Below, in pieces: positions 461-49,061 of a stretch of 64,000 nucleotides of DNA. The position numbers were made by a program, and so were the translations under genes. The DNA comes from Macrostomum lignano. Taxonomy: Eukaryota. The stretch's first letter is position 1. Every line of letters starts with the position of its first letter. Under the pieces are notes generated by a model. The model worked only from the letters and a program-made list of their open reading frames with translations. It was not told the DNA's origin and searched no databases. The stretch is from contig NIVC01002142.1 of the NCBI GenBank assembly GCA_002269645.1, positions 12,472-76,471 on the forward strand, written 5' to 3'.

Positions 461-3400
461 CCGTCATTGGCAAAGTTCGGCCCAACGCGGAAGCTCAGAG
501 AGCCGTCAGACTCGCAGACCAGCACCGAGCAGTTTGCCCTGTCCACAATGACCACGCGACGCTGTTTGCAGATTCGAACTCGGTGGGGTCGCAGATTCCG
601 AATAGCCTCATCGGCGGGGCCTGTCACAGTCAGCCGGCCGATCTGGCTGCCCCTGGAGTCATACGCCCGAATGGCTCCCGATGGCTGCTCCAGGATGAAG
701 CAGCGGTCGGCCAGCCCGCCGGCAGAGACGGCCCGTTCCGATGCGGCGAGCGTCAGCAGCACCAGACTAGCGATGGCGGCAGACGGACTGTCGGAGTGGC
801 TTGCGTCGGTGTCCTCACTGCAATTCAGTTTCCTGCGCCGCTTGCATTATTAACAGCAGATTAGTGTGCCGGTGTGTAGCAAGTGGGGACTGAGAATCTG
901 GGAGGCTGGCACAGCAACTGAGGATCTGGGAGGCTGGCACAACAACTGAGGATCTGGGAGGCTGGCACAGCAACTGAGGATCTGGGAGGCTGGCACAGCA
1001 ACTGAGGATCTGGAAGGCTGGCACAGCAACTGAGGATCTGAGGATCTGGGAGGCTGGCACAGCAACTGAGGATCTGAGGATCTGGGAGGCTGGCACAGCA
1101 ACTGAGAATCTGGGAGGCTGGCACAGCAACTGAGGATCTGAGGATCTAAGAGGGTGGCACAGCAACTGAGGATCTGGGAGGCTGGCACAGCAACTGAGGA
1201 TCTGGGAGGCTGGCACAGCAACTGAGAATCTGGAAGGCTGGCACAGCAACTGAGGATCTGGGAGGCTGGCACAGCAACTGAGAATCTGGAAGGCTGGCAC
1301 AGCAACTGAGGATCTGGGAGGGTGGCACAGCAACTGAGGATCTGGGAGGGTGGCACAGCAACTGAGGATCTGGGAGGCTGGCCCAGCAACTGAGGATCTA
1401 GGAGGCTGGCACAGCATCTGGGAGGGCGGCGGACCTACTATAGATTTAAACTGGGAATGAGTAAAGCGAACTGGGAAGGTAACTCTGGATCAACAATTAG
1501 TCGCTGCTAACATCTTCTCAGGGTGCAGGCCGCCAGCAGTGCGGGGCGCGCACAAGCCGCCATCGCAGCAGACGCCCAGCTGGCTGTCCGGCAGCCAGCA
1601 CATGTCTCTGACAGCGCCAGCCAAGCTCAGTCTGACCATTCGAACAATGCTTGAGCAGTCGCTGCTCAGGCACAGAATCCTTGGCCCCTCATCGGTGAGC
1701 ACGGAGACGAGGATGCCTTCATCGCTGGCCAGAACGCAAGGCCTGCTCAGTGACAAAATTTCATCAGGATGAGCAGCCTGCAGAGTCAGCGAGGCAGCCA
1801 TTTTAAATGCATTCACTTTGAAAGCGTAGAGACTGTAGCCATCTGGTTGCCTGGCAACCTCATCAACAACAAGCAGATTCTGCAACTTGCTACTCCAGGC
1901 CAGACTAATCGGATGCCTCAATCTGTTCAATTTTTTACTTTTATTCACGACAGTCTTCCAAGCGCTGGGATGCTGGAGCGAAACAAACAGAATGCCTTTG
2001 TCGGAGCAGCAGATGGCCAGCAGACTGCCAGTGCTGACCGCGTCTTCCAGGTTTTCGATGCTGTAGCTGGACAGAGAAAAAACGATTTCTGTTAAAATCT
2101 ATAAAGTTGGTTAATTATTACACTTGTAAATTCCAAAATTCAGACGCTTGCTGCGTGAATGTTCTCGCCAGTAAAGACAGAGACCATTGCATCGCAATAA
2201 TCCAACCAACCTGCAGCTGAATCTCGGTCCAACTTGAAAGCGCAGTTGACCATCTGGTTGGCAGACGGTCACAGTTTGGCCAGCTTGATCCAGGATGATA
2301 AGCAGCTGGCGCTTGTCGCATACTCGGATGCGGCTGGGATGCGGCGACAGCCGAGACACGCCAAGGCGGCCCAAATCTGCTCCCTCGGAGCTGAATGCTC
2401 GAATCTGGGACTCTGCGAGGGTGGTAGCGAAAATCCGACTGGACAAGCAGGCAGCCGACAATACGTAGCTTGATGTAGATACAGAGGCTGCGATGATAAA
2501 AGTGGAAAAGTCGACTCCACCAGTAGGCGACACCTTAGTCACAGGCTGAGCAGTCGGCATAGTCTCCTTAGACTGCACCGATGTTGATAGTTGGGCACCA
2601 CTGCCAGCACTCACCAAGCCTGAGCGCAGTTCTCTGCAATTTAAAAAACAGTAAAACTAGAAAACGTCAATATTCGGCGCTATTACACTTTAATGAGGGG
2701 TGAAGCTGAAGCGGTCCTCTCACCTGCGACAAGTATCGTCAAAGAATTTCTCAGGAAATGAGCTACAAACTCCATCAGCAGAGCATAGTATCAGTGTCTG
2801 GCTACGCCAACACATGTCAGTAACTGTTTCCATGACCGAGAGTTTAACAGTACCGATCAAGGAAGTACATGTATCGTTCATGCTGACAATCTGTGGTCCC
2901 TCACTGCTCAATACAGAGAGCAGAATACTGCTGCTGCTGCACAGCACGCACGGAGTGGCCAGGGACTTCACTAGCACACTGGATTGGGACACGAGAATCA
3001 GTCCGATAGTGGATGCAGCTTCATTTCCAACTGAAAACATTTTAACCATGTACTGACAGCTGTCAACTTCATCGAGAACTACTAGCTGTTTAAGCTTCGA
3101 GTGCCACTCCAACTGCACAGGACGCATCAGTTCGATTATCTTCTTTGGGATGGCCGTTCGGACCGAAATATTGGCAAAGTACACAGCAAAGATGCCGTTG
3201 CTCGGGCAGCAGATCATCAGCCGGCTCTCCGTGCTCACTGCGTCTAATGGCAGCTCCAGCAGCCTGAAATATAAAGATTTAGGCCCTTTAATTCGGATTT
3301 ACTATTGGTAACCATTGTTAAATGTGAATCAACGGCTTTCATGACTCCAATGCAAAATACAAACATATTAGAAAACTCGAAAAAGCATTGATTACATTAA

Positions 3401-4310
3401 GAGTTTTGAGCTACCTTTTCTTGCTGAACTTTGGCCCAACGCTGAACTCAAGCCGACCGTCAGGCCGACACACGGCCACAACACCGGCACTTTTGTCAAC
3501 TACAATCACCAGCTTCCGTTTGCTGCAGACCCGAATGCGATGGGGCTGCAGAGCCACCGCAGACCCATCAGGGTTCGTCACAGTCAGGTCGCGGATCAAA
3601 ATTGCTGGACTAGAAGAATTGCAAAATCGAATAACATTTGATGGCTGCTCCAGGACAAGGAGCTGGCCTGACAGGCTGGCGACAGACACGGCCTGTTTTG
3701 ATGCACCAGTAGCTGACGCAGCCTGTTTTGATGCACCAGTAGCTGACACAGACTGTTTTGATGCACCAGTAGCTGACACAGCCTGACTTGACGAATCAGT
3801 AGCTGACATAGCCTGTTTTGATGCACCAGTAGCTGACACAGCCTGATTTAACGAATCAGTAGCTGACACAGCCTGTTTTGATGCACCAGTAGCTGACACA
3901 GCCTGATTTAACGAATCAGTAGCTGACACAGCCTGTTTTGATGCACCAGTAGCTGACACAGCCTGACTTGACGAATCAGTGGCTGACTCAGCTCCTGAGG
4001 CATCAAGAAGTTTCTTCATCACTCTGAGCAGTTCGCTAGCCGCAGACTCCGCCGCAGCCTCATCCCAAGAGCAGCTGACTGCCCAGCTGGACTCATCACT
4101 TAGAGCCTCATCCAGGACAGCCTCAGCATCCAGCAGCTCCTCTAGAGAGGCTGGCAGCTCCATATCGACGATGGCCCGCAGGCGGTCTCGAGCCCGGCTT
4201 CGGCTGGCCATCTCCGCGGCTACAGCAGTCCGGCGCCTCTGCACAGCCAGTTGAAGCTGCTCAACGAAGCTGCTGGGCTGCGGCAGGGCGTCAACGGCCG
4301 GCGAATCCAT
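461..4310 (-). CDS. Multi-propeller gene C: helical N-terminus + 10-aa repeat linker + tandem divergent NHL-like beta-propeller units (3' end probably beyond the window start)
   Basis: Hand-built exons: 4310-3415, 3263-2724, 2633-2211, 2066-1512, 832-461. All introns are GT..AG and phase 2, and internal exons are multiples of 3. NHL-like blades include PHRVRICKQRRVVIVDRANCSVLVCESDGSLSFRVG and LRHPISLAWSSKLQNLLVVDE. A further donor (GG|GTCAG) at 460 suggests more exons outside the window. Confidence 0.75.
888..1420 (+). repeat. 28-bp minisatellite array (CTGAGGATCTGGGAGGCTGGCACAGCAA), intronic in gene C
   Basis: Direct tandem repeats; they produce the spurious PPRSSVAVPASQILSCC ORFs. Confidence 0.95.
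3690..3990 (-). repeat. Coding 30-bp minisatellite (QAVSATGASK/QAVSATDSSS), ~10 units, gene C linker
   Basis: In-frame tandem repeats inside ORF 3411-4310. Confidence 0.9.
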
Positions 4311-5286
4311 GCTGAAATATTATACGTTGCCATGGAAACTATAAGAAACCGAATTTCTAGGCTCTGAGTCCTACCCTAAAGTTAAATGAAATGAAGAAAA
4401 CAATGGTCATAAAATGTCAACACGAGCTGACAGGGCAGCCTTTGTTATTTTCATAGAGCATTTAATATAGAAAATATGGCACAGTGTTGAACAAATAGTT
4501 TCTCTGCAATAAGTGTTGAATAAATAACACATTAATAGGCAATCACCGCATACACTGAAGAGTCGGAAAAGTCGCAAATAACGATTCAGTGGCACCACAA
4601 AAGCGTTAAACTACAGCACAGCTTAAAATAATAATTTACCGCGTGGTTGGCCACCGGATAACATCGAAAATAAACGAATTATAAGTAGAGGATAAGTAGA
4701 GACTCCACCTTATGAGCTTAAGTTTACAGACTAGTCTTTAATTATCCTCTTGCTTGTTCTCTCCTATTCCAAGTCCAATTTTTGTCGCTTTTTTCGCAAA
4801 ATCCAGCTTTCTGGTGTCACTGTGAGCAGAATGACGTATCATTTGTGTGCATAGGTTACTCGGGCTCCGCTTTTATGAGCTTAAGTTGACAGGCCCTTTC
4901 AAATTATCAGCACTCAATTTGATACAATTAAAAGGTAAATTTTAATTTCATAGTCGTTTTGTCATCCTTTTAACAAAAGTCAAAGACTAAAGCCCTAAGC
5001 CATCAGGCTCCGATTGACGAGTAGTTTGACAGTTTGGTCCGGTTCCGGTTATTCCTGATTCTCTGAGAGCATAAATATCCACGAGCCTGATGATAGTGAA
5101 CCTGATTTACCAGCCTAAATCTTGAATAAAAAAAATAAAAAATCACAGAGCTGTGGGCATCATGCCCCATTCCGCTGACTCCTGAGCACCCATACACACA
5201 CTCACTGGTAATTCGCACTATCTACTTAAAGTACTAGTAGGCAACTTAGCCAATCTACGAGTAAATGCATGCAAACTCAACTAACT

Positions 5287-8200
5287 TCAGGTGTCAAGAA
5301 TCAGCTTTCCACCGCAGCACAGCCAGAGCTGCCGCCCCGCCCAGCTCATGTCGGTGACGGCGCCGCCATCCGCAGGCAGCTGGCAGTCCGCGACGGTGCT
5401 GACAGCCGAGCAGTCGTCGGCCACGCTCAGCAGCCGAGGCCCCTCCTCGGTGAGCGCAGACAGCAGGAAGCCGCCGCTGCTGCTCAGCACGCTGGGGACG
5501 GCCAGGGAGCGAACGGGGTCGCGAAGAGCGGCCTGGAGATGCAGCGTGGCAGCAGTAGGGCTCTTCACGATCTGGAAGGTGCTCACGGAGAATCTGTCGG
5601 TGGAGACTTCGTCAAGCACGATGAGCAACTGGCGGGAGCCGCTCCAGGCCAGGCGGATCGGCCGGCGCAGCTTGTTGCGCTCTTTTTTTATTGTGGTTCT
5701 CCACTGGCTGGGCTGCTCCAGGGACACCAGGTAGAGGCCCCTGTCAGGTGAGCAGATCGCCAGCAGCTCGCCAGTGCTGATGGCGTCTGATGGCTTAGAA
5801 AGCAGAAAGCTGCAGATCCGGAAGGTGAACAATGAAATTAATTTTTACAGGCAATTGAGCAAAGATGATTACAATTTCAATTCGCCTTACTTAGTGCTGA
5901 ATCGAGGACCAACAGAAAACTGCAGTCTACCCTCCGAGCTGCACACATAGACAATTTGACTCAGCTCATCAATGAGAATGAGAAGCCCGCGCTCCTCGCA
6001 GACTCGAATTCGCGCTGTCTGCGGGCTGAGCTTTGAGCCGTCAGATTTGGTCAGCGTCAGCAGCTGCCTGCTGGCCGGGCGATTTCGATCACAGTCCATT
6101 GACGTCACAAGGACGGATCTGGAAGTCGGCTCCAGAATGTACAGCTGATCAGACAGGCGGGCTGCTGAGGAAACCAGGATGTCAGAGGTGACATCAGCTG
6201 GACTCTGCTGTTTTGGCGCAGCTGTCTCCGCTGATGGGGTCCAACTGCTGCAGCTGTGGCGGAATTGGCATGGCGGACATTAAAAGTTTTTAGTGACACT
6301 TTTGGCTCTGTGTTGGCTCGGTTCTTATCAGTAATAATAAGCCAGCAAGAGCAGCCGAACAAAAATTGAAGCGAGCGAGTGACAATTGAAGCGACCGAGT
6401 GACAAGTGAAGCGAGCGAGTGACAATTGAAGCGACCGAGTGACAAGTGAAGCGACCGAGTGACAATTGAAGCGACCGAGTGACAATTTAAGCAACCGAGT
6501 GAAAATTGAAGCAGCCGAGTGACAATTAAAGCAACCGAGTGAAAAGTAAAGCAACCGAGTGATGATTTAAGCAACAGAGAGAAAATAAAAGCAACCGAGT
6601 GACAATTGAAGCAACCGAGTGAAAATGGAAGCGACCGGGTCGATTTGGCAAAATACAACAGCTGAAAAAAACATTTAGAATGACAAACCTCTCATAGCTA
6701 ATTTCCGGCCAGAGTAGTAGCTTGTTTCCATGGCAACAAGCCAGCTCTCGCTGCCACCAAAACAAGTTAGTAGCCAATGAAGAACCCGCATCTTCAACGG
6801 TAAACTGTTGCACTGAATCGCACTGACTGCCAGACAGCAGAAGAACTTTGGATCCGCTGGTACCGCTGACAGACACCAAGATGCAATCCCGGCCGCACAG
6901 CAGACTCGGCCTAGTCAGCGACTCAACCGGAACTCCACCCGCTGGAGATCCTTGCGGAGACAGCGCGGCCGATGTCTTGATGACAGTGATGGTAAAGGCC
7001 AGGATTCTGTACGCACCGGGTCGCACTCTGCGCCCGGTGGACGCAGCCGCGGTCTCGTCGGCCACCACCAGCCACTTGCGCGAGGCCATCCAGCCGAGAC
7101 GCACCGGACAGGCGAGGTCGCAGCGGCCTTTCCGCACGGTGGTCCGCCAGGCGTCCGGTTTGGTTAGCGACACCAGGTAGAGAGCGAACTCGGGACTGCA
7201 GATGGCGAGCAACTGACCGGTGCTGACAGCGTCTTCAGGGGCTTCCAGGCTGTAGCTGCATTGGAAACAGTCAGTTAGCAGTGCAGAATGAGTGCTTGAT
7301 ATAGTAATATTTTAACTGAAGGACCAGATAAAGAATCCCATAGCGAGACTCGGACAGGCGAGAGATTGGATGAAAGAAAAGATAGAAGATAAGAGAGAAG
7401 AACGGAGAGAGAAATAAGAGGGAAGAGAGGAGAGGGAGAGGGAGAAGAGGAGAGAGGAGAGAAGATAGGGAAGAGAGGGTACAGGAGAGTGAGAAGAGAG
7501 GGGAAAGAGAGCTCAAAAAAGAGACACCAATCTTGAGCGGGCCGGATTGCTATGGTGAAGTTTCAAATGACCGGAGGGCCGGACTGAGAGGCTTCTCGGG
7601 CTGCATGTCTCCCATGGACCGGAATCTGGCGACCACTATTTTACCGCGTAACCCTGACACCGGACTACGAAACCCTGCAGTCAAGCTTAAAGCAAAGACT
7701 GCAACGGATCGAAATTCTACTGACTCCCTGTGGCTGGTAGGAACAGTAAGAAGGGATTCCAACGAAGCGACACTGAGCTGCCCAACCCGAACCTCGAAAA
7801 TTTGTGTTGCAGAAAGTGTCTTTTCTCTTTATGGACTTTGTCAGTTTCATTATGTATGGAACTCTGCAACTGCGAATTATCTTCGATACACGGCAGCTTA
7901 TGAACTATTGAGCTCAGTAAACTCACGCGTCGCTAAACTTTGGCCCAACCTGGAAGCTGAGCTGGCCATCTGGCTGGCAGACGAGCACCGCACTCGGGTA
8001 TACGATGAACACCAAGCGACGGCTACGGCAAACTCGAACAGCGCGCGGCTGCTGCGATGCAACTGACGCAACTGACGCAGCAGCTGAGCTGGTTACTGAC
8101 AAGCTGCTAATTTGGCTTGACTGCGAGTCGCAGACTCGAACAGCTGGAGACTTCAGCTGAAGAAAAAAGCACTGGCCCGACAGAAATGCAGCCGAGTAAA

Positions 8201-10025
8201 TTTGTACCGACGAGCCCATTGTAAGCAGAGTCTGGGGTGGAACAGCTGAGGCTCCAGGCTGAGTAGCTTTGCTGAGCTCTGAAGCTTGACTGTTGGTCAG
8301 CTTTGGAAAATACTGGTATTCTCTGCAATGGAAATAAAGCAGCACACAGCTCAGGTTGTTCCGCAATCAAAATGTGACAGTTCAGGCTCTCTCACCTGCC
8401 ACAATCAGTAACCTGTCCACCGGAGCAAACAAGCAGTGTCTGGTCACTCCAGCACATGTCAGTCACTGGTTCCCTGACCGATAGGCGAACAGTTCTCAGC
8501 ACTGAAGTGCAGGCGTCATCCATGCAGACAATCTGCGGTCCCTCAGAGCTCAGCACAGACAGCAGAGTGCCGCTGCTGCTGCACAGCACGCACGGAGTGG
8601 CCAGGGACTTCACTGGAGCACTGGACTGGGACTTTACTTTTAAATTAGCAGACGTCTTTGTCAGGGAGATGGAAAATGCGTACAGTTTATAGTGACACTT
8701 TCCAACTTCGTCAAGAACGATTAGCAGCTTCGGCTTCAACAGCCACTCTAGACGCACAGGCCTTTTGAGCTTGAGCAGCTCCTTCACGAGTGTCGTACGC
8801 CAACTCTTAGGACGTGCGATGGACACCATCAAGATCGCAGAGTCTGGACAGCAGAATACGAGCTGGTCACCTGTACTCACTGCGTCCTCTGGGTGTTGCA
8901 CGAGCTTTCTAAAGTGGAATTCAAGCTTTAAATGAAATCGTGCAAAAGTATACTTTATTAAATCGGGTTCACTAACTTGTGGCAGCTGAACTTTGGCCCA
9001 ACGCTGAACCCAAGCTGACCGTCAGGCCGACAGACGGCCACAACACCGGCACTTTTGTCAACTACAATCACCAGCTTCCGTTTGCTACAGACCCGAATGC
9101 GATGGGGCTGCAGAGCCACCGCAGACCCATCAGGGTTCGTCACAGTCAGGTGACTGACCGAGGCTGCAGCGCCAGGAGAGCCGAAATTCCGAATGACATT
9201 TGATGGCTGCTCCAGCACAAGGAGCTGGCCTGACAGGCTGGCCACGGACGCAGCAGCCTGTTTAGATGCACCAGTAGCTGACACAGCTTGACTTGACGAA
9301 TCAGTAGCTGACACAGCCTGTTTTAACGAATCAGTAGCTGACTCAGCCTGTTTTGACGAATCAGTAGCTGACACAGCCTGACTTGACGAATCAGTAGCTG
9401 ACACAGCCTGACTTGACGAATCAGTAGCTGACACAGCCTGACTTGACGAATCAGTAGCTGACACAGCCTGTTTTGATGCACCAGTAGCTGACTCAGCCTG
9501 ATTTGACGAATCAGTAGCTGACACAGCCTGTTTTGATGCACCAGTAGCTGACACAGCCTGTTTTGATGCACCAGTAGCTGACGCAGCCTGTTTTGATGCA
9601 CCAGTAGCTGACACAGCCTGACTTGACGAATCAGTAGCTGACACAGCCTGTTTTGATGCACCAGTAGCTGACACAGCCTGACTTGACGAATCAGTGGCTG
9701 ACTCGGCTCCTGAGGCATCAAGAAGTTTCTTCATCACTCTGAGCAGTTCGCTAGCCGCAGACTCCGCCGCAGCCTCATCCCATGAGCAGCTGACTGCCCA
9801 GCTGGACTCATCACTGAGCGCATCATCCAGGACAGCCTCAGCATCCAGCAGCTCCTCTAGAGAGGCTGGCAGCTCCATATCGACGATGGCCCGCAGGCGG
9901 TCTCGAGCCCGGCTTCGGCTGGCCATCTCCGCGGCTACAGCAGTCCGGCGCCTCTGCACAGCCAGTTGGAGCTGCTCAACGAAGCTGCTGGGCTGCGGCA
10001 GGGCGTCAACGGCCGGCGAATCCAT
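5287..10025 (-). CDS. Multi-propeller gene B (~1136 aa, three A+B NHL-like units)
   Basis: Exons 10025-8977, 8908-8396, 8322-7927, 7255-6689, 6253-5891, 5809-5287 (TGA). They sum to 3411 nt in frame, and all five introns are phase 2. The N-terminus MDSPAVDALPQ is near-identical to gene C. Confidence 0.78.
6370..6640 (+). repeat. 20-bp minisatellite (GAGTGACAATTGAAGCGACC), gene B intron
   Basis: Tandem degenerate copies seen directly. Confidence 0.9.
9255..9715 (-). repeat. Coding 30-bp minisatellite, ~15-16 units, gene B linker
   Basis: In-frame tandem repeats inside ORF 8958-10067. Confidence 0.9.
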
Positions 10026-10089
10026 GCTGAAATATTGTTCGTTGCCATGGAACTTATTGGAAAGCATAATATTGTAACGTAAGTAGCTT

Positions 10090-10350
10090 TAGACGAGTAG
10101 CCTAGTGGTCCAGGTGCGGTCCAGTCTCGATTCCAAGTGCAGTCACTTAATTTTTGGGGCTAAATTAGAATCTCGGCTTGGCTCTGCTCGTGCGATTAAC
10201 GCTCTTGATGACCAACCCCCAAGGCACAGTGAAGTGTACATGCCTAACGATAAATAAAGTTAGGGCCGCTGTACACTCCTGTGTGAGTGTGTGCCTGTGC
10301 GTATGACTGCCGCGCGCTTGTGTGCCTGCTCAGAGGGAGTCGGCGGAATG
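10090..10350 (+). mobile_element. SINE-like element (family 1), between genes A and B
   Basis: tRNA-like head GTAGCCTAGTGGTCC. The body GTGTACATGCC...AGGGCCGCTGTACAC..TGTGTGAG is shared with 15650-15800. Confidence 0.55.
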
Positions 10351-10945
10351 GGCAGTAATGCCTCTCGCCGGTTGTGCGACAATGTCGCAAAATCTGCACC
10401 ACGGGTGCACACAGCCCCCTTGACTCTAAGTAAACACAGCTACCTTTACTAGAAAGACGTGGGCCATTTTTGAAGCTATAAAGAAAAAATGCGGATTGTT
10501 TTGGTGCTGTAGCAACTGATTTTAGCATCAGTTGGTTTCGTGAAAATTGAAAAATAAATTTATTGGATAACCAACAGTAGAACAAATATAACTTTTGTTA
10601 GATAAATAAATAGATATGAAGAGTCTAACAGCAAAACAGGCATAAAATACTACTACTGGAAAAATTTCCTTCTAGTCATGGTAAATTATTATCGAGGTGA
10701 AAAAACTATGCATCATCTAATCAGACACTTCTTAGCAATGTAAAACTAACATCGAATGAAAGCCAGTGAATAAAGAATCAACTGTTCTCTTTACAAAAAG
10801 GGTAAAAGCTCTTAAAATGTTGCAATTGTATTGTAATGTTTTAACTACTCCTAGCTAAACTATAGAAAGTCAGGCAGAATAGTTTAATACTTGATAGTCA
10901 GAATACTCAGATTTCCCGAGATGATCTATTAAACATCTAGACGAA

Positions 10946-13900
10946 TTAAACACTGGAAATCACTGGTCCATCAGGCTGGACTGATGACGTTGAAGTGATG
11001 GAAGACAAAGACGGGGCCAAGTCAGGCTTAATCAACTTGCCACCGCAGCACAGCCAGAGCTCCCCCTTAAGCCAGCTCATGTCGGTGACGGCGCCGCCAT
11101 CCGCAGGCAGCTGGCAGTCCGCGACGGTGCTGACAGCCGAGCAGTCGTCGGCCACGCTTAGCAGCCGAGGCCCCTCCTCGGTGAGCGCAGACAGCAGGAA
11201 GCCACCGCTGCTGCTCAGCACGCTGGGGACGGCCAGGGAGCGAACGGGGTCGCGAAGAGCGGCCTGGAGATGCAGCGTGGCAGCAGTAGGGCTCTTCACG
11301 ATCTGGAAGGTGCTCACGGAGAATCTGTCGGTGGAGACTTCGTCAAGCACGATGAGCAGCTGGCGGGAGCCGCTCCAGGCCAGGCGGATCGGCCGGCGCA
11401 GCTTGTTGCGCTCTTTTTTTATTGTGGTTCTCCACTGGCTGGGCTGCTCCAGGGACACCAGGAAGAGGCCCCTGTCAGGCGAGCAGATCGCCAGCAGCTC
11501 GCCAGTGCTGATGGCGTCTGATGGCTTTGACAGCGACGAGCTGAAGATGCGTAAAGGTGAAGTAAATCATCAATTTGAAAGATGGAGCTAGCTTTTGGTT
11601 TGATATCTATGACAGATTGGTGCTGTATCTGATACTTTTGGCAGCTGTTTTTTAAGTCCCTTTTATCTTAACAAACAAAAGCTGAGCATTCGACCCCAGC
11701 CACGGCCAATAGAAAGCAATAATGTACTATGGAAATATCTCCTAATGCAAATACTGAAAGATACAATGTAAACCTTTGTTGCACCAACCCAGTTGAATAC
11801 GCATTCTCAAGATAATAAAGATTCCAGTTGCCTCTTGTTACGGCTTATACAGTGCTGGCAACTCCCAGCTTGTACATAGCTGCTTTCTAAGTCAAAGCAG
11901 GCTCACTGTTGCTGCCTCCAGGGGTGACGCAAACAGCCAATGCGTACTAACCGCTGCCAACTCTGCTTAACTAGCAATCCCTTGAGCTGGCTGATAAGGA
12001 CAAGCAAAAAAACTAAATGATGAAGCTTCAAACTCACTCAGTGCCGAATCGCGGTCCAACTGAGAACCACAGTCCGCCCTCCGAGTCGCAAACGTGAACA
12101 GCTTCAGCTGACGGGTCAAGCAAGATGAGGAGGCCGCGCTCCGAGCAGACTCGAACTCGCGCTGGCTGCGGCACGAACTCGGCCTGTCCCGACTGGGTCA
12201 GCCTTAACTTGTCGGCCGACAAATGGCCAAGCGACTTGGACAGCTGGACAGAACCGGATGGCAGTTCAAGGACGAAGCCTCTGTCAGGCGATAAGAAGGC
12301 CGCAGACTCGACGTACGGTTGGCACGAGGCGTCGCTGTAGCTGGAAGAAATCAAACAAGTTCTCTATTAACCCGATAAATAAGAAATACACGATATTAAA
12401 TTTGAAAAAGGCATAGAGAATGCCCGCCTTATACTACTGCTAGCCATTTGATGAGAACATACATGTAGCACTAGCAGTAGTGCAGTAGTGAGTTGAAGTC
12501 AGCTGTTACTAGCATATTCACTGTTCTTGATGAAATCATTATAACTATGATACTAACCTTTCGTAGTGAACATCGGGCCATAGCAACAGCCTGTTGCCAT
12601 GGCAACCAGCCAGGCGCTGGTCCCACCAGAACAGGTCGGTTACCGCCAGACTGTCAGCAGTTGCCTCTCCATCGGAGAATTGCTGCACAAGCTGGTGGGC
12701 TCCAGCGGCGATGAGCACTATAATATTTGAGTTGTTCGGCCTGCTGCAAGCTGCCAGGATGCAGTCCCGACCGCACAGCAGGCTCGGCCTAGTCAGCGAC
12801 TCAATAACAACCGGCAAGCACTGCTTAAATAGCGTAGCCGCTTTCTCGTTTGAGCTGATAGAGAACGGCTGGATTCTGTAGAAAACCCTATCGGGCAATT
12901 GGTCGGCTACGACTAGCCACTGACGGGAGGCCAGCCAGGCCAGGCGCACCGGACAGGCGAGTCCGCAGCGCCGTTTCGTGACGACAGTTCGCCAAGTGGC
13001 TGGGCGTTTTAGCGACACCAGGTAGAGCGCGAACTCCGGACTGCAGATTAGTAGAATGCTGTCGGCAGCGACTGCATCCTCGGGGGTCAGCAGGCTGAAG
13101 CTGCGAGTAGTTATTTAGAGGCACAGGCAGAATTAAAACTAGCCGAGAAAATTTGCAGCAAGAAAGGTACCAGCTCAGAATTGCAGCAGCTGTCTAATTT
13201 TAGAACTTTAAATCAAAAAATAGAAGTGAGGAGGAAAGGAGAGAAAAGCAAAGAGAGCTGAGACGAGACACAAAATCCTGAGCGGTCGGGATTGCTATTT
13301 TGAAGTTTCAAAAGACCCGAGGATAACAGTACATGTACAGAACACACAATTTTACAGTTAGAGAAGCTGGGAAAGAAACTACAATGGATTATTTGAAGAT
13401 ACCTGTAAACCATAAACTATTGTCTACTGGTAATTATTGCAATCATTTCATATAGAATCCCATCTTACGCATCGTTGAACTGGGGCCCAACGCTGAAATA
13501 GAGCCCACCATCTGGCCGGCACACATGCACAGAGCAGGCCGCCCTGTCCAGCACTATCACCAGTTGAAGCTTCTGGCTTGCCCGGACACAGTGCGGCCGC
13601 AAATTGGAAATTGTCTCTCCACTAGTCGGGTCGGTGACTGCCAATTCGCCAAGCTGATTGCCAAACGAATCGTATACTCGAACAGCTTGAGTAGGCTGCT
13701 CCAGCATATAGCACTGGCCAGACAGGTAAGCAGCTGATACAGCAGAGGCATTCGCTGTGCTTTTAGCGAATCTTGGGTCGTTCGAGTCCCTTAGCTTTCT
13801 GCAACAAAGTTTTAACGTTGCTTTTTTAGGCTTTAATTTTAGTCACTTGTGCAAGAAAAGTTTGGAGACACGGAATCCATATGGAAATAGGGATGTGTTC

Positions 13901-16900
13901 TGGAAAAACCGACCAAGGGAAGACTTCCCGACGTAGGGAAGACCACCTTGAGAATTGCTACTAACCAAGTGTTTTGCTAGCCTCGTAAATTGTTCATGGA
14001 AATTAACTCTACAGACTGAGTGTCTCAGCCAATCTTGACACTGTCGCAACCTTCCGACACTTACTTAAGAGTGCGTCCGACAGAACGCAGCTGGGCTCCT
14101 AATACTGGCATGACATGACAACTAATTTTAGATTTCCACAGGTCTACTTTTTAAAATTCGTTGGGTCCTCCGTGTCACCGTAAGCGACGCGGAAAGGCCT
14201 GGTGGCGACGCCTGTTGTATCGATAATAGGCAACGAATTTTTCGAACAAAGTAACGATGGTTATTGATTTCCTGGTAGCTATCTCGTCGTAGCTGATTGG
14301 TTGGTTTCCTTCCGGACTGAATATTTTGGGAATTTAAAAAAACGGCTCACTCCGGAACCAGGAAAGAGAAACGTCATTTATTGTGCGGTAAATGACGATA
14401 AAATAGATTGTAAAAATTATGAAAACAACCAACTTTTCCGGATGAAAACTGCAGCTTCCAGAATCCACCGTCCATAAGGCACCATCGCTGCAGATTCCTA
14501 GCCGGTTGTCCGGCAGCCAGCACATGTCTTTGACGGCACCGGCCAAGCTCAGTCTGACCACTCGAACAATACTTAAGCAGTCGCTGCTCAGGCACAGAAT
14601 CTTGGGCCCTTCACTGGTGAGCAAAGAGATCAAGATGCCCTCAGCGCTGGCTAGAATGCAAGGCGTGCTCAAAGATAGAAGCTGATCTGGCAAGACAGCA
14701 CACTGTTGCAGCATATTCGGTACAAATTGCTGCTGCACAGAGAAGGCGGCCAGTCCGTAGCGATTTTGGCCAGCCTGATCCACTACAAATACTATTCGAC
14801 GCTCGCAGCTCCAAGCCAGACGAACCGGGCGGTTCAACCGAATTTGGTTCTTTTTAACTGTCATTTTCCCAACAGTCGGCCCGTTCAAAGACACAAGAAA
14901 CAGGCCGCGATTCGGATTGCAAATTATCAGCACGTCGCCTGTACTGACGGCGTCCTCGCTGTTCGCTAGGCTGTAGCTGAAATACGGAAAATATAAATAT
15001 CGTCCTTAATGACTGCTAACAAATTGAAGATGAGTAGCACTATGTCAAATACAGTAAAATGCATGCCAGTTACTACACCACATCGGGGCTGAGAAGGCTC
15101 TCGTACAAAATTAACCTGGTTGAATTCAAGAGGACCACTAGAACTTACCGTTGTACCAGGACGTAACACTCGTAAATAGTGCAAAATAATCATGAAGGCC
15201 CGCTTGTTCACGAGTCCGTACGTGTATTTATAATCGATTTTCTACAAAAAAGCATCCTATTCGAACCACAGAAGCTCCAGAACAGGTGTAGTTATAATTT
15301 GTCAAGGCTTTAATCTGCTTAATCTACGATTACGAGCTGTTTGTGATGGAATCTTGCAACTCGTTTAAAACTTGCTGTGCTCTTTATGCAGATAAACTGT
15401 TAGCGTTACTAATTCAACAATTAGCTTGCAATAAATTATCAGACGGGTTTTTAGCTAATTTCTTATAAATATGCTTTAGCTGTCATAAAGTTATCTCACT
15501 AACCCTACGCTGTATATATGCTATGTTGTACTGTTTTAGAATTATTATTGTAAGTGCAACTGATTCGGAGTTATGAGCATTTAAATTTTAGCTGCAATGC
15601 AAACAAATAAGGCCTTCAAATAATTTTGCAATATTTGCGAGTGTTACGTCCTGGCACTCTCGGAGAGTGTACATGCCGAACATGATGAGAAAGTCAGGGC
15701 CGCTGTACACCCTGTGTGAGCGTGTGGGTGCTCAAGGTTCAGCAGAATGGGCCTGACTGCCCAAATAATAATAATATTGATTTATTAATCAATATTATTA
15801 TTAATCAATAATTTTTTGATTCTACCAATGGGCAGATGTGCAACCGACAGCTCAGCCGCAGCTATTGCGCAGCGCATCTAAAGGTTGCGCACGGCTGTTT
15901 AATCTAGCTGGCACTCATTTTAAAGCTGGGTGAACTGAAGCAATTTAAGGACACAAATTGGTCTGAGTAGGCCGAGAATCGAACCCCTGACCTTTTAGTC
16001 GAGAGTCCGACGCTCTAACCACCAGGCTACAACCCCTCCAGGCAAACATAGCGCACACATATGTGGCAGCAATTGAAGCTCAGATTCAATTCAAACAAAA
16101 TTTCGACTAAAAATTTAAAAAACTAACAAATGTGCCGCAATAGCAGAGCGCACCTACAAAGACTGATTAAACTTGTACAATGCAACTCTTATCCTGCAAC
16201 CGCAGCTCGGAGCTGCTACCCCCAACTCTACCCTGGTTCGATAAAAACCATCGATACCAATTCCAACCAACCCACCAGCTGCTGAATCTCGGTCCAACTT
16301 GAAAGCGCAGTTGGCCATCTGGCTGGCAGACGGTCACAGTTTGACCGGCCTGGTCTAGGATAACAATCAGCTGACCTTCGCTGCATGCTCGGATGCAATG
16401 GGGACGAATAACTATTGCAGATCCATCGTGATTGGTCACGTTAAGGCTACCAACACAGTTCCAATGTGAGTTGTACACGAATATAGAATGCGTTGATCGC
16501 GAGACAACGAAGCACTGATCTGACAGACTGGCTATGGAGACAGAGTCTGTAGCTAAGATAGGCTGATAGCAGGCAACTGTCTCTACCACATCTGCTAAGT
16601 TAACTACTGAAGCTGTGGGTGAGACAGGCTGAGTGGGCGCTTCAGCACGCGAAGCAGCTTTTTTCTTACCAACTTTTTTAGTCACAATTGCAGACTCAGC
16701 GACAAATGCTCTACAATAAGAATGAACGGAAATGACAATCAATGATACAGATTAAGCTGAGCAAAATCATACATTTAAATAGCTCTCACCTGTCATCAGC
16801 ATCATCAATAACCTCCTGTATCGCACAGACTTCTCCACCGGAGCAGACAAGCAGTGTCTGGTCACTCCAGCACATGTCAGTCACCGGTTTCCTGACCGAT

Positions 16901-18203
16901 AGGCGAACAGTTCTCAGCACTGAAGTGCAGGCGTCATCCATGCAGACAATCTGCGGTCCCTCGGAGCTCAGCACAGACAGCAGAGTGCCGCTGCTGCTGC
17001 ACAGCACGCACGGAGTGGCCAGGGACTTCACTGGCTCACTGGACTGGGACTCTGATTTCAGTTCAAATACATATTTCTTCTCCTCGGTAATGGAAAACAG
17101 GTTTAACAAGTACTGACAGCTGTCAACTTCATCAAGCACGACCAGTTGTTTGATCGTAGAGTTCCACGCTAAGCGTACAGGATGCGTCAAATTGGTAGTT
17201 GAGTTTAGAAAAGCTGTGCGCACGGATGGCCGGTAGAGGCAGGCCATGAAGAGGCCGGTGGTAGGGCAACATATTATCACGAATGAGCGTGCACCCACTG
17301 CGTCTTCAGGCTGCTTTAAATGCCTACGAAAAATAAAATGCGGGAAGGAAAATAATTTACGTATCAGAAACTTATGGAAAAGAGAGCGGTGAGGAAAATT
17401 CAGAGATTAGTGGAGCGGTGAGGCAAGTTCAGAGTATGAATAAAGATCGGAATTTACTTTTTCTTGCTGAATTTCGGCCCAACGCTGAACTGCAATTCGC
17501 CGCCAGCCTGACAAACAATAACAACACCGGCTGATTTATCAATCACTACAAGCCTTTTAGCGCTGTACTTCCGAATGCGGTAAGGCTTCACAACCACTGC
17601 ATTCGATTCAGCATCCGTTATTTTGAAGTTTCGGAGACTGCCACCGAGGCAGTCGGTAAATTGAATAACACCCGATGGCTGATGGAGATAGACTAACTGG
17701 TCAGACAAACAAGCAACTGACTCAACCTGATGAAACGTGTCTGTGGCTGACTCAGCTTGGTGAAGCGAGTGGGAGCCTGACTCAATCTGATGAAGCGAGT
17801 CGGTGGCTGACTCAATCTGATGAAGCGTGTCTATGGTTGACTGTATCTGGTGAAGTGAGGCTGTGGCTGACTCAGCCTGGTGAAGTGAGGCTGTGGCTGA
17901 CTCAGTCTGTTGAGACAAGTTGGAGCCCATTGCTTGATTTAAGATACGGAGCAGGTCTCGTGTTGCCGACTCTGCCTCAGCTTCATCCCATAAACAACTT
18001 ACTGCCCAGCCTCCTGTCGCCACTAGTGCCTCATCCAGCGCAGACTCCGTATCGCAAAACTCCTGCAGCGAAGCTGGCTCTGCGTCAATCAGCATTCGCA
18101 ATTGTTCTCTAGCTTGATGCCAATCATCCAGCTGCAGACTAATACTGGCTCGCTGTCTCTCCGCGGCCACTAGTAGCCAATCAATGAAGTCCCGCGCAGA
18201 CAT
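10946..18203 (-). CDS. Multi-propeller gene A (~1342 aa, four A+B NHL-like units)
   Basis: Exons 18203-17458, 17323-16790, 16710-16276, 14976-14434, 13798-13469, 13100-12558, 12340-12038, 11540-10946 (TAA). They sum to 4029 nt in frame, and all seven introns are phase 2. B exons begin with (P)EDAVS(T)G-like motifs and end in V(T/K)DM(C/S)W or TDLFW; A exons end in DG.L.F.VGP.F. Confidence 0.78.
15650..15800 (+). mobile_element. SINE-like element (family 1) 3' part with (AAT)n tail, gene A intron
   Basis: Homologous to about 10230-10340; ends in AATAATAATAAT. Confidence 0.55.
15830..16040 (-). mobile_element. tRNA-derived SINE (family 2), gene A intron
   Basis: On the minus strand: A-box-like TAGCCTGGTGGTTAGAGC and B-box GGTTCGATTC, then a TTCACCCAGCTTTAAAATGAGTGCCAG core. 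A partial second copy lies at 45850-45960. Confidence 0.7.
17670..17900 (-). repeat. Coding 30-bp degenerate repeat (QAESATASLH), ~7 units, gene A linker
   Basis: In-frame repeats inside ORF 17454-18203. Confidence 0.8.
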
Positions 18204-21200: not shown

Positions 21201-22123
21201 AACTCCTTAAATTCACGAAGGCACTTTAAAATTTATTCAAGTGTAGTAGTATATGCTTTATTAACACAGTGCAAAAATAAATCAAGTCATCCCAAAAGCT
21301 TTTGCGCTTATTTTTTGGGTGATTGTTCATAACATCCGCTGTTTCACTTTATCCTTCGGAATTTCAAGCATATGATCATGCTTTTTCGCTCTGACTAATT
21401 TTAATTCGTAGAAAATTCGCGCAAGAACTTTCCGAATAACCGGATATTACATTATATTAAACTATAGCCTCAGGTGTAGGAAATTGCACAAAAATATGCG
21501 CATGCACACGCTAGCCAAATCTATCTATGAAAATGTTCACAACATTAGATAAGGAATGCGCCTGACTGCTAAGCAGGAACTGACGTAAATAGAAAATAAA
21601 AACATAGGAAAGATAAAATAACTGAATTTTTTTCAATCTCCGTGAAACAGTGCGCGCACAATGGATTTCATAGGGAATGCACTATAGATTAAAATGAATT
21701 TTCAAAGTGCATCCACTCAGCATTCGAGCTGTCACTTACAGGGCTCAGACTATAATAACTAATATTACTAGGAAACTGTGACTCATTGCAATTAAAACAA
21801 GCAGATTAAAAAAATGCGCAGTACTAGCTAAATGTCAATACTATCAAATAACAATTTGTAGCTACATTTGATAATAATGATAATCCAAGATTAAAACATC
21901 AATAAAGGGAATTATAATTAGACAGTCGCGTTAAACAAAAATACCTACTGACGAGCCGTAATCCAAGTAAGATTATATATGTATATTTATTTTTATCGTA
22001 TCAAAAATTATAATAATACACCGAGGCGATACTATGAGCTGGAAACAGCTGATCATGGATAGAAAATAACAGACATATGCATAAGATTACCAATTAAAAT
22101 TTAGCGTTTAATTATCGCATTGT

Positions 22124-37657: not shown

Positions 37658-38452
37658 TCAATCCAAGTGTTCTTGCAAACTTTGCACCTGTTCAATAGCC
37701 ACTGCCAGCAGCCGGCAGATCAAGCCTCGCTGTCCAGTGCAGCAATATCTGTCCAAATGCACGGGCTGGAATTGCAGCAGTTGACTAGCACAATCTTTCG
37801 GCACTGTGCCAAAGAATCGCCGCTCCAGCTCCATGGCGGACATGTCGTACACAGATTCCAACAGGTAGCGCCAGGTCATTGGTCGGCCCTGCCAGTACTG
37901 CGGATGATGCTCGTTGCGGCTGTAGTGCAGCTGCAGGCCTCTCTGCCAGGCCTCTTCATCTGGTTGGCCCAGTTGGTTGCTGGGGTACCAGCGCTGCGCG
38001 TAGGTTACTGTCTCAACAAACTCGAACTTGCTGTCATCGTGTCGATCGATCTGTTCATCCGTGGGATCCAGCTCCGGCTGAAGCTCCGGTGTTAGGCAGC
38101 CTTCTGTTAGCAGAATCTTCTTCACTTGGCCCACCATTACACCGTTGAATAGCTGATAGCAGTGCTTCACTTGGGATTTGTGACGGTTCACATACTCATA
38201 ATAAGTCTTCACATTCAGGTCCAACCATAGCAGCTTAGTAAAGTCGTGAACGTCTGGTATTTCTGCAGCTGACTTGCGCAGCATCTGCAGCTCCGACTCA
38301 GCCAGCAGTTGCCTGTCGCTAGGCCAAAGCGATAAAATTATTTTCATTATGCAGCCGTATGGCGAGAGCAGGCGTAAACTCTCTCGCTGTCCAGATTGGA
38401 CACCTGCGGTGCTGATGAATTTCTCTTTGGTATCCGCCGCTGCCATCTGCAT
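37658..38452 (-). CDS. Intronless HD-superfamily protein, DUF5662-like (264 aa)
   Basis: Single ORF with YVNRHK, RHDDSKF, HYSRNEHHPQYW, MTWRYLLESVYD. This matches the H..HD.SK..H...N.HH..YW..E...D pattern I recall for DUF5662. Confidence 0.72.
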   Translation of the reverse strand: MQMAAADTKEKFISTAGVQSGQRESLRLLSPYGCIMKIILSLWPSDRQLLAESELQMLRKSAAEIPDVHDFTKLLWLDLNVKTYYEYVNRHKSQVKHCYQLFNGVMVGQVKKILLTEGCLTPELQPELDPTDEQIDRHDDSKFEFVETVTYAQRWYPSNQLGQPDEEAWQRGLQLHYSRNEHHPQYWQGRPMTWRYLLESVYDMSAMELERRFFGTVPKDCASQLLQFQPVHLDRYCCTGQRGLICRLLAVAIEQVQSLQEHLD

Positions 38453-48027: not shown

Positions 48028-48103
<76 letters not shown>

Positions 48104-48229
48104 AGCCTTTCTGTCTGTCTGTCTGTCTGTCTGTCTGACTGTCTGTCTGTCTGTCTGTCTGTCTGTCTGCCTGTCTGTCTGTCTGCCTGTCTGCCTGTCT
48201 GTCTGTCTGTCTGTCTGTCTGTCAGCCTT

Positions 48230-48260
<31 letters not shown>

Positions 48261-48263
48261 GAC

Positions 48264-48296
<33 letters not shown>

Positions 48297-48379
48297 GCCT
48301 GTCTGTCTGCCTGTCTGCCTGTCTGTCTGTCTGTCTGTCTGTCTGTCAGCCTTTCTGTCTGTCTGTCTGTCTGTCTGCC

Positions 48380-48414
<35 letters not shown>

Positions 48415-48507
48415 GTCTGTCTGCCTGCCTGTCTGTCTGCCTATCTGTCTGTCTGTCTGTCTGTCTGTCTCTGTCTGCCTGCTTGTCTGTCTGTATGCCT
48501 GTCTGCC

Positions 48508-48543
<36 letters not shown>

Positions 48544-48571
48544 AGCCTTTCTGTCTGTCTGTCTGTCTGAC

Positions 48572-48604
<33 letters not shown>

Positions 48605-48799: not shown

Positions 48800-48830
<31 letters not shown>

Positions 48831-49060: not shown

Positions 49061-49061
49061 G

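What the first reader, a model, noticed from the sequence alone, without database searches (positions are those of the whole stretch)
461..18203. Tandem array of three large multi-propeller (3-4 x NHL-like) proteins: candidate uncharacterised recognition or defence gene family
Seen: three head-to-tail paralogs share the layout helical N-terminus, variable repeat linker, then (A exon + B exon) repeated 4, 3 and at least 2.5 times. A exons carry about 2 blades and B exons about 4, so each pair could form one six-bladed propeller. Established: TRIM-NHL proteins (Brat, LIN-41, TRIM2/3) have a RING and/or B-box, a coiled coil and a single NHL propeller. I see no RING, B-box, signal peptide or TM segment here, so these look like cytosolic multi-propeller proteins. 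Inference: tandem duplication with module-number variation and patchy divergence resembles rapidly evolving immune, allorecognition or RNA-binding restriction families.
Basis: partly seen in the sequence, partly recalled or inferred. Interest (0 to 1): 0.82.

Follow-up and report, generated by a model that had tools for sequence, protein, structure and literature searches.

The report
Flatworm tandem multi-NHL-propeller gene trio
Three neighbouring genes of the flatworm Macrostomum lignano each encode a soluble protein made of a short helical head, a variable repeat linker and three or four divergent NHL beta-propellers; the family is real, unnamed and found only in this species, but nothing tested supports an immune or fast-evolving role.

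Summary
Window 461-18203 (minus strand) holds three head-to-tail genes of Macrostomum lignano (contig NIVC01002142.1). Each has a three-helix N-terminus, a 10-aa coding minisatellite, then exon pairs A+B repeated 4 times (g1), 3 times (g2) and 2.5 times in the window (g3; 4 in the full homeologue).

All introns between the coding exons modelled here are phase 2 and all internal exons are multiples of 3. One A+B module folds with high confidence (pLDDT 89.7) as a six-bladed propeller. Its best structural and sequence matches are the NHL domains of TRIM3, TRIM2, Thin, Brat and TRIM71. No RING, B-box, signal peptide or TM segment was found.

An exhaustive HMMER scan found strong relatives only in M. 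lignano, including a second tandem cluster.

The immune or allorecognition reading is not supported:
- The four propeller positions are old, distinct classes conserved between genes, and g2 simply lost class 2.
- Patchy divergence reflects two gene-conversion tracts.
- pN/pS is 0.27 between homeologues and omega is 0.3-0.5 between paralogues.
- Putative top-face loops are no more variable than bottom loops.

The most likely function is a RING-less, non-catalytic multivalent binding scaffold. That function is inferred, not shown.

The parts
17458..18203 (-). g1 exon 1: start codon, helical N-terminal domain, 10-aa repeat linker, A1 (blades 1-2 of propeller 1)
17717..17913 (-). g1 coding minisatellite, 30-bp unit, about 6.6 copies
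16790..17323 (-). g1 exon 2: B1 (blades 3-6)
   Evidence: identical to PAA60530
16276..16710 (-). g1 exon 3: A2
14434..14976 (-). g1 exon 4: B2
13469..13798 (-). g1 exon 5: A3 (carries the best sub-threshold Pfam NHL hit in the window)
12558..13100 (-). g1 exon 6: B3
12038..12340 (-). g1 exon 7: A4
10946..11540 (-). g1 exon 8: B4 plus stop codon; nearly identical to the g2 last exon (gene conversion, dS 0.10)
8977..10025 (-). g2 exon 1: ATG directly preceded by a splice acceptor (first exon base 10026), helical domain, linker, A1
9254..9702 (-). g2 coding minisatellite, 30-bp unit, 15 copies (7 more in the homeologue)
8396..8908 (-). g2 exon 2: B1
7927..8322 (-). g2 exon 3: A of propeller class 3 (class 2 is absent in g2)
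6689..7255 (-). g2 exon 4: B of class 3
5891..6253 (-). g2 exon 5: A of class 4
5287..5809 (-). g2 exon 6: B of class 4 plus stop codon
3415..4310 (-). g3 exon 1: ATG directly preceded by a splice acceptor (first exon base 4311), helical domain, linker, A1; recently converted with g2 exon 1 (dS 0.095)
3685..3992 (-). g3 coding minisatellite, 30-bp unit, about 10 copies (4 more in the homeologue)
2724..3263 (-). g3 exon 2: B1
2211..2633 (-). g3 exon 3: A2
1512..2066 (-). g3 exon 4: B2 (A2+B2 is the module modelled with AlphaFold)
461..817 (-). g3 exon 5: A3; the gene continues beyond the window start (B3, A4, B4 in homeologue PAA60524)

Best explanation
SHOWN. The region holds three intact, annotated, tandemly duplicated genes of the free-living flatworm Macrostomum lignano. 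They belong to a family for which strong relatives were found only in this species. Each protein is soluble and has no signal peptide or TM segment. Each consists of (i) a roughly 100-aa N-terminal domain of three helices, (ii) a Ser/Thr/Ala/Gln-rich 10-aa repeat linker whose copy number differs between paralogues and homeologues, and (iii) a string of divergent six-bladed NHL beta-propellers. Each propeller is encoded by an exon pair: A gives blades 1-2 and B gives blades 3-6. The exons are bounded by phase-2 introns, so exon pairs can be gained or lost in frame.

The four propeller positions form four old, distinct sequence classes that are conserved across the genes. It follows that a four-propeller gene arose first by exon-pair duplication and was then triplicated. 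g2 deleted class 2, and gene conversion later homogenised two exons. Coding sequence is under moderate purifying selection.

INFERRED. The proteins act as RING-less, non-catalytic multivalent binding scaffolds, equivalent to the substrate-binding half of a TRIM-NHL protein. The helical head probably mediates self-association. The flexible linker spaces it from four non-redundant NHL platforms that bind protein or RNA partners. The acceptor sites placed directly before the ATG of g2 and g3 suggest that the mRNAs are matured by spliced-leader trans-splicing, possibly from a shared precursor.

My confidence is about 0.9 for the shown anatomy and evolutionary history, and about 0.3 for the scaffold function.
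For: Gene models: validated against NCBI proteins (100% for g1; 97% for g2 and g3 homeologues with no junction gaps).

Organism and locus.

Propeller fold: AlphaFold pLDDT 89.7, pTM 0.89, 23 strands. Foldseek top hits are the NHL domains of Thin, TRIM3, Brat, TRIM71 and TRIM2, with TM 0.64-0.71 over the whole module. The module profile hits TRIM3 NHL at E=1.4e-5 and TRIM2 NHL at 2e-3 in PDB sequences. It also hits genuine Pfam-NHL proteins at E=2e-6 to 9e-4 in 1.84 billion representatives.

Restricted family: 15 hits with E<1e-10, all from M. lignano. A second tandem cluster shares the same A|B intron position.

Four positional classes: 53-80% identity within a class, 31-46% between classes.

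Selection and conversion.

No RING or B-box. No TM segment, and charged N-termini.

Helical head.

Trans-splicing background: about 39% of M. lignano genes are trans-spliced and about 7% of transcriptional units are multi-gene precursors (PMC5730564). Acceptors sit immediately before the ATG.
Against: No ligand, partner, expression pattern or phenotype is known, so the function rests on analogy alone.

Pfam NHL stays below its gathering score (best 16.6 bits against a cut-off of 20).

The N-terminal domain shows no detectable similarity to TRIM coiled coils or to anything else in the PDB, and its tertiary packing is poorly predicted (pTM 0.38). Dimerisation and TRIM ancestry are therefore conjecture.

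Module charge is inconsistent between genes: pI 5.7-7.4 in g1 and 8.4-9.1 in g2 and g3.

Omega of 0.3-0.5 is higher than for typical conserved genes.

Other Macrostomum species are not represented in the protein libraries searched, so 'species-restricted' may really mean genus- or order-restricted.
Confidence: 0.55

Rival explanations
1. RNA-binding post-transcriptional regulators. The propellers bind RNA motifs on their top faces, as in Brat, LIN-41/TRIM71 and TRIM2/3. Four different propellers would give combinatorial RNA recognition without ubiquitin-ligase activity. This is a specific version of the scaffold idea.
For: The nearest sequence and structure relatives are exactly the RNA-binding TRIM-NHL propellers. 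Modules of g2 and g3 are basic, with pI 8.4-9.1 and net charge +3 to +11. The head-linker-NHL order resembles the C-terminal two thirds of TRIM-NHL proteins.
Against: g1 modules are acidic to neutral, with pI 5.7-7.4. Identity to TRIM-NHL domains is only 13-17%, so RNA-contact residues cannot be assessed. NHL propellers also bind proteins (established knowledge).
Confidence: 0.2
2. A rapidly evolving immune, allorecognition or restriction gene family. On this view, tandem duplication and module shuffling diversify recognition surfaces.
For: The family is taxonomically restricted and lies in tandem arrays, at least 3 genes here and at least 6 in a second cluster. The linker minisatellite varies between copies. 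Omega of 0.3-0.5 is moderately elevated.
Against: pN/pS is 0.27 between homeologous loci. The propeller classes are positionally conserved rather than shuffled. 'Patchy divergence' is gene conversion. Putative top-face loops show 56-59% within-class identity, not lower than bottom loops at 51-57%. The array structure is conserved in the homeologue. There are no immune signalling domains and no signal peptide. Neighbours are Avl9, RMD1-3, DUF5662 and a glutamate-receptor gene.
Confidence: 0.1
3. One giant read-through gene. The three units are spliced in frame into a single protein of about 11 propellers, using a donor inside the last B exon (last exon base 11052 in g1, 5321 in g2) and the acceptor just before the next ATG (first exon base 10026 and 4311).
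For: Both donor-acceptor pairs are phase-compatible. The UniProt models A0A1I8FRI7 (P0001) and P0003 carry exactly the g2-to-g3 junction '...GRQLWL|MDSPAV...'.
Against: Each unit ends in a stop codon and restarts with its own ATG and helical head. The transcript-based NCBI annotation of the homeologous locus gives three separate proteins. The internal GT sits in a conserved codon context (TGG CTG TGC) and is expected by chance. An acceptor abutting the ATG is what spliced-leader trans-splicing predicts in this species (PMC5730564).
Confidence: 0.1
4. Secreted or structural product, such as an adhesive, seminal-fluid or sperm protein. Such proteins are often lineage-specific and repeat-rich in Macrostomum.
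For: The family is lineage-restricted, rich in Cys (3-4%) and carries a Ser/Thr-rich repeat linker.
Against: There is no signal peptide or TM segment and the N-termini are charged. The gene identifiers were absent from the reproduction-related supplementary tables I could search, though those tables are incomplete.
Confidence: 0.05

Closest known systems
TRIM-NHL proteins (TRIM2, TRIM3, TRIM32/Thin, TRIM71/LIN-41, Brat)
   Same: Both have a six-bladed NHL propeller, and these are the best structural matches (TM 0.64-0.71) and the best sequence matches (TRIM3 E=1.4e-5). Both are cytosolic. The overall order is similar: a helical region, then a low-complexity linker, then NHL.
   Different: This family has no RING and no B-box. 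Its helical head is about 100 aa and has no detectable similarity to TRIM coiled coils. It has three or four propellers instead of one. There is no filamin domain. Identity is only 13-17%, and the family is restricted to M. lignano rather than conserved across animals.
NHL-repeat-only or RING-less NHL proteins (NHLRC2, NHLRC3; Brat lacks a RING)
   Same: The NHL propeller is used as a binding module without a RING E3 domain. NHLRC2 appears among weak profile hits (E=0.76, not significant).
   Different: NHLRC2 has a thioredoxin-like domain and a single propeller and is widely conserved. Here there is no Trx domain, and there are several propellers plus a helical head.
Bacterial and metagenomic multi-NHL-repeat proteins
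   Same: Several NHL propellers occur in one chain. They are the only non-Macrostomum hits of the module profile (P0017-P0022, E=2e-6 to 9e-4; P0017-P0020 were scanned and carry strong Pfam NHL matches).
   Different: The four scanned are canonical NHL repeats recognised by Pfam. One of them (P0020) also carries secretion-type domains (HYR, Por_Secre_tail, CHU_C). The similarity to the flatworm modules covers only blades 1-2 and is weak.
Second M. lignano cluster of the same family (Mlig001862, Mlig025850, Mlig012073, Mlig019003, Mlig027204, Mlig019517/024364)
   Same: Same helical head motif (F..L...L.RRR..L), a variable low-complexity linker, the same A|B intron position, and a same-strand tandem array.
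   Different: These members mostly carry one propeller (two in some), have a longer N-terminal helical region, and are much more divergent (E=1e-21 to 1e-40).

Membership tests
NHL-repeat six-bladed beta-propeller superfamily | Closed six-bladed propeller made of four-stranded blades | tested here: met
   AlphaFold2 model of module g3_M2: pLDDT 89.7, pTM 0.89, 23 strands in six groups. Foldseek probability 1.00 to NHL domains over 263-277 aligned columns.
NHL-repeat six-bladed beta-propeller superfamily | Pfam PF01436 (NHL) match above the gathering score | tested here: not met
   Best scores are 14.5-16.6 bits against a cut-off of 20, with E 0.008-0.04.
NHL-repeat six-bladed beta-propeller superfamily | Significant profile-to-sequence similarity to established NHL proteins | tested here: met
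   The module profile hits TRIM3 NHL at E=1.4e-5 and TRIM2 NHL at E=2e-3 in PDB. It also hits Pfam-confirmed NHL proteins at E=2e-6 library-wide.
TRIM-NHL (class VII TRIM) | N-terminal RING finger | tested here: not met
   No Pfam RING in g1, P0001, P0028, P0036, P0012 or seven other relatives (P0007, P0009-P0011, P0013, P0016, P0017). No RING Cys/His pattern in any frame of the window, L001 or L002.
TRIM-NHL (class VII TRIM) | One or two B-box zinc fingers | tested here: not met
   Same searches as for RING.
TRIM-NHL (class VII TRIM) | Antiparallel dimeric coiled coil preceding the C-terminal domain | tested here: inconclusive
   Three predicted helices (12-51, 56-77, 84-104), pLDDT 76 but pTM 0.38. 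No PDB sequence or fold match. Oligomeric state is not testable here.
TRIM-NHL (class VII TRIM) | A single C-terminal NHL domain | tested here: not met
   Three or four propellers per protein.
Rapidly evolving immune or allorecognition gene families | Excess non-synonymous change (omega at or above 1), concentrated on a recognition face | tested here: not met
   pN/pS is 0.27 between homeologues and omega is 0.29-0.52 between paralogues. The one higher value, 0.70, is in the short converted tract. Top loops are not more variable than bottom loops. This is a coarse test with few sequences.
Rapidly evolving immune or allorecognition gene families | Copy-number or presence/absence variation between haplotypes | tested here: inconclusive
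   The same three genes, in the same order and with the same module content, occur at the homeologous locus. Only the linker repeat number differs. No population data.
Rapidly evolving immune or allorecognition gene families | Expression induced by pathogens or non-self | not testable with these tools
   No expression data for these identifiers in the supplements I could search.

The most novel reading that the evidence does not exclude
A family restricted to Macrostomum descends from a TRIM-NHL ancestor that lost its RING and B-boxes and then multiplied its propeller by exon-pair duplication. The result is four positionally specialised NHL platforms on one chain. They would act as a combinatorial RNA- or protein-binding hub with no ubiquitin-ligase activity. 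The three genes would be co-transcribed and resolved by spliced-leader trans-splicing.
Probability: 0.15. Interest if true: 0.6.

Novelty: new variant of a known kind. Interest (0 to 1): 0.4.

Why it matters
These genes are annotated only as 'hypothetical protein', or carry misleading automatic names such as RING-type, MMS1_N, RIC1 or Nuclear pore. This analysis gives them a fold, a domain grammar and an evolutionary history.

A string of four different NHL propellers without an E3 module is an unusual architecture for an animal protein. It is also a clean example of domain multiplication by symmetric-phase exon pairs.

If the propellers bind RNA like their TRIM-NHL relatives, the family would be a flatworm-specific layer of post-transcriptional control, in a model organism used for stem-cell and germline research. 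That idea is open to direct test because RNAi and transgenesis work in M. lignano.

As an immune-family candidate, the finding is weakened.

Tried and rejected
1. Single-exon and whole-protein Pfam scans gave only sub-threshold NHL and RIG-propeller hits.

2. phmmer of g1 against PDB gave only TRIM3 at E=0.19. A module profile was needed to reach significance.

3. The word-indexed homologue search returned a single protein. The exhaustive HMMER scan replaced it.

I rebuilt it with exon fragments.

5. The N-terminal domain gave nothing significant, either as a profile against PDB or in Foldseek with the AlphaFold model. TRIM coiled-coil ancestry therefore remains a conjecture.

6. Expression look-ups turned up nothing. 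I ran a full-text search for the Mlig identifiers and searched the supplements of four M. lignano papers. One table had been truncated when stored.

7. Literature searches for Macrostomum plus NHL or TRIM found no relevant paper.

8. tblastn of the modules found no further copies in window 18300-64000.

9. A regex scan for RING and B-box patterns in all frames of the window, L001 and L002 was empty. It would miss a finger split by introns.

10. I considered and rejected pseudogenes or TE debris, because ORFs of more than 1100 codons are intact in two loci and pN/pS is 0.27.

11. My first g3 acceptor (832) was replaced by 817 on the evidence of PAA60524.

Full report
**What is there**

The first 18 kb of the window has GC-rich coding blocks in an AT-richer background. 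All long stop-free segments that resemble each other lie on the minus strand.

Listing GT and AG sites with their reading phase showed a uniform grammar. Every 'A' segment (about 100-145 codons, ending ...F.VGP.F) has a good donor in phase 2. Every 'B' segment (about 170-190 codons, starting ..PEDAVSTG) has a polypyrimidine-CAG acceptor in phase 2 and a phase-2 donor.

Joining these sites gives three open reading frames with no internal stop:
- g1: 8 exons, 1342 aa, 4 A+B pairs.
- g2: 6 exons, 1136 aa, 3 A+B pairs.
- g3: at least 5 exons, 2 pairs plus an A exon, truncated by the window start.

All internal exons are multiples of three (303-567 nt). Any A+B pair can therefore be duplicated or deleted without a frameshift.

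**Source and validation**

The only word-index hit was a Macrostomum lignano UniProt entry. Exact look-ups place the window on contig NIVC01002142.1 of assembly GCA_002269645.1, Mlig_3_7.

The NCBI transcript-guided protein PAA60530 is 100% identical to my g1 model over 1068 aa. It starts at an internal Met, so exon 1 of g1 is my addition.

A homeologous contig, NIVC01002143.1 (locus L001), carries the same three genes in the same order. Its proteins PAA60523 (1202 aa) and PAA60524 (1415 aa, partial) match g2 and g3 at 97%. The only gaps are in the repeat linker, two small indels, and one acceptor that I corrected from 832 to 817.

PAA60524 shows that g3 is a four-module gene in full. The observation, including the count '4, 3 and at least 2.5', is therefore confirmed.

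**What a module is**

Pfam does not recognise the proteins at its thresholds. The best hit is NHL at 16.6 bits against a cut-off of 20.

An alignment of the modules supported an AlphaFold2 model of module g3_M2 with pLDDT 89.7 and pTM 0.89. The model is all-beta with 23 strands in six groups. The A part contributes eight strands (two blades) and the B part fifteen (about four blades).

Foldseek against the PDB ranks the NHL domains of Drosophila Thin (TRIM32), TRIM3, Brat, TRIM71 and TRIM2 at the top. TM scores are 0.64-0.71, coverage is the full length, and identity is 13-17%.

At the sequence level the module profile reaches TRIM3 NHL at E=1.4e-5 and TRIM2 NHL at E=2e-3. The alignment runs along the classic NHL motif, 'hivVD..n..V.vf.pdG.l...fG'.

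**The rest of the protein**

The first exon of each gene encodes about 100 residues predicted as three helices (12-51, 56-77, 84-104). pLDDT is 76 and pTM 0.38, so the helices are credible but their packing is not. This domain has no significant sequence or fold match in the PDB.

A 30-bp coding minisatellite follows, with units such as SATGASKQAV, SATDSSSQAV and ESATDSLHQI. It has about 6.6, 15 and 10 copies in g1, g2 and g3. The homeologues of g2 and g3 carry 7 and 4 more copies.

No RING or B-box is present. None appears in Pfam scans of the window protein g1 and twelve relatives, and none appears as a Cys/His pattern in any frame of the window or of two related loci.

There is no hydrophobic N-terminus. 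The most hydrophobic 19-residue windows are propeller strands.

**Family and distribution**

An exhaustive HMMER scan of 1.84 billion representative proteins with the module profile found only 21 hits.

The 15 hits with E<1e-10 are all M. lignano proteins. They are homeologous or allelic copies of these three genes on at least three contigs, plus a second subfamily.

That second subfamily forms another same-strand tandem array of at least six genes (L002). Its members have one or two propellers, a longer helical N-terminus sharing the motif F..L...L.RRR..L, a variable low-complexity linker, and the same A|B intron position at profile position 89/90.

The six weak hits (E=2e-6 to 9e-4) come from metagenomic sources. 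The four that I scanned carry strong Pfam NHL repeats.

UniProt's automatic names for the flatworm proteins (RING-type, MMS1_N, RIC1, CNH, WD repeats, Nuclear pore) are artefacts. I found no RING in the 'RING-type' entry.

**Evolutionary history**

A module-by-module identity matrix resolves four positional classes:
- Class 1: g1_M1, g2_M1, g3_M1 (54-66% identity).
- Class 2: g1_M2, g3_M2 (53%).
- Class 3: g1_M3, g2_M2, g3_M3 (53-55%).
- Class 4: g1_M4, g2_M3, g3_M4 (69-80%).

Identity between classes is 31-46%. The four-propeller chain therefore predates the gene triplication, and g2 has simply lost class 2.

Synonymous divergence between paralogous exons is about 1-1.8 with omega 0.29-0.52. 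Two tracts are exceptions, with dS of about 0.1: exon 1 of g2 against g3, and the last B exon of g1 against g2. These are best read as gene conversion.

Between the window and the homeologous locus there are 30 synonymous and 24 non-synonymous differences, giving pN/pS of 0.27.

I also classified loops by strand order in the model, taking B-C and D-A loops as the top face and A-B and C-D loops as the bottom face. Within-class identity is 56-59% for top loops and 51-57% for bottom loops, against 68% for strands. No hypervariable face is visible. This is a coarse test, because the face assignment follows convention and the sequences are few.

**Transcription units**

g2 and g3 each have a strong acceptor immediately before the ATG (tatttcag|C ATG). 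g1 has one about 25 nt upstream.

In M. lignano about 39% of genes are SL trans-spliced, and about 7% of transcriptional units are multi-gene precursors (PMC5730564). The homeologues of g2 and g3 share one transcriptional-unit prefix (Mlig023818.g1 and .g2). This suggests, but does not prove, a common precursor.

The same acceptors are phase-compatible with a GT inside the preceding last exon. Older MAKER-type UniProt models (P0001, P0003) use that GT to fuse g2 to g3 in frame. I rate this read-through as unlikely but not excluded.

**Function**

Nothing here is measured.

The best-supported mechanistic reading is a non-catalytic, multivalent binding scaffold. A helical head possibly self-associates. 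A flexible repeat linker follows. Four non-redundant NHL platforms then bind partners. The conservation of each position since the gene duplication argues for distinct partners at each platform.

The nearest relatives are RNA-binding TRIM-NHL propellers, and the g2 and g3 modules are basic (pI 8.4-9.1). RNA is therefore a reasonable ligand guess. However, g1 modules are acidic to neutral, and NHL domains also bind proteins.

The immune or allorecognition reading is not excluded, but it failed every test available: selection, module shuffling, face variability, array stability and genomic context. Neighbouring genes encode Avl9, RMD1-3, DUF5662 and a ligand-gated channel.

**Novelty and score**

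The fold is known (NHL). What appears new is the family and its architecture: RING-less, a helical head plus a minisatellite linker plus three or four distinct NHL propellers, exon-pair modularity, and restriction to one species. I found no paper on it.

I classify it as a new variant of a known kind, of moderate interest.

Noticed in passing
window 889-1420 (g3 intron); similar translated repeats at 24375-24827, 25648-26139, 52234-52756, 53143-54160: A 28-bp satellite (ACTGAGGATCTGGGAGGCTGGCACAGCA, about 18 copies) sits in a g3 intron. ORF translations of the same kind (PASQILSCWASLPDPQLLGQPPRSS) recur at four other places in the window, on both strands. It looks like a dispersed genome-wide satellite.
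   Followed up: no
window donors with last exon base 11052 and 5321; acceptors with first exon base 10026 and 4311: A GT inside the last B exon of g1 and of g2 is phase-compatible with the acceptor abutting the next gene's ATG. UniProt models A0A1I8FRI7 (P0001) and P0003 use it to fuse g2 to g3 in frame. The NCBI models keep the genes separate.
   Followed up: partly
window 17717-17913, 9254-9702, 3685-3992; L001 3962-4925 and 10286-10713: The coding 30-bp minisatellite in exon 1 differs in copy number between paralogues (about 6.6, 15 and 10 copies). It also differs between homeologous copies (+7 units for g2, +4 for g3), always in frame.
   Followed up: partly
L003 (NIVC01002142.1, the window's own contig): On this contig the record lists only Avl9 and a 5'-truncated g1 (1068 aa, starting at an internal Met). 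g2 is intact but uncalled, and the part of g3 that the locus covers is also uncalled. All three genes are called on the homeologous contig.
   Followed up: partly
L001 14439-15413: In the g3 homeologue the B exon of propeller 3 and the A exon of propeller 4 lie in one uninterrupted open frame. The intron between these two modules therefore seems to be absent, or is in frame, in g3.
   Followed up: no
L002 (NIVC01001995.1, 89188-111498): A second tandem array of at least six same-strand family members (892, 586, 603, 622, 632 and 597 aa), present on three contigs. They have one or two propellers and a longer helical N-terminus.
   Followed up: partly
window 6364-6637: A 20-bp tandem repeat (about 13.7 copies) lies inside the g2 intron between exons 4 and 5.
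   Followed up: no
window 22120-23346 and 48012-49518: Two strongly strand-asymmetric low-complexity blocks. The 2-kb composition bins covering them show GC skew -0.64 (22001-24000) and AT skew -0.68 (48001-50000). They produce long spurious ORFs (PSPTHFLTCL... and SVCLSVCL...).
   Followed up: no
window 24790-25515 (-), 34247-34789 (+), 37658-38452 (-), 59224-59889 (+): Neighbouring exons encode Avl9 (E=5e-19), RMD1-3/TPR (E=1e-22), DUF5662 (E=1e-20) and a ligand-gated ion channel of the glutamate-receptor type (E=1e-19). This is ordinary housekeeping or neuronal context.
   Followed up: partly
L001 26936 onward; P0004: About 10 kb downstream of the g3 homeologue lies a large Ig/I-set gene. 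One UniProt model (A0A1I8J9V1, 1733 aa) chimerically fuses family B exons to a sequence carrying the automatic name 'Ig-like domain-containing protein'.
   Followed up: no
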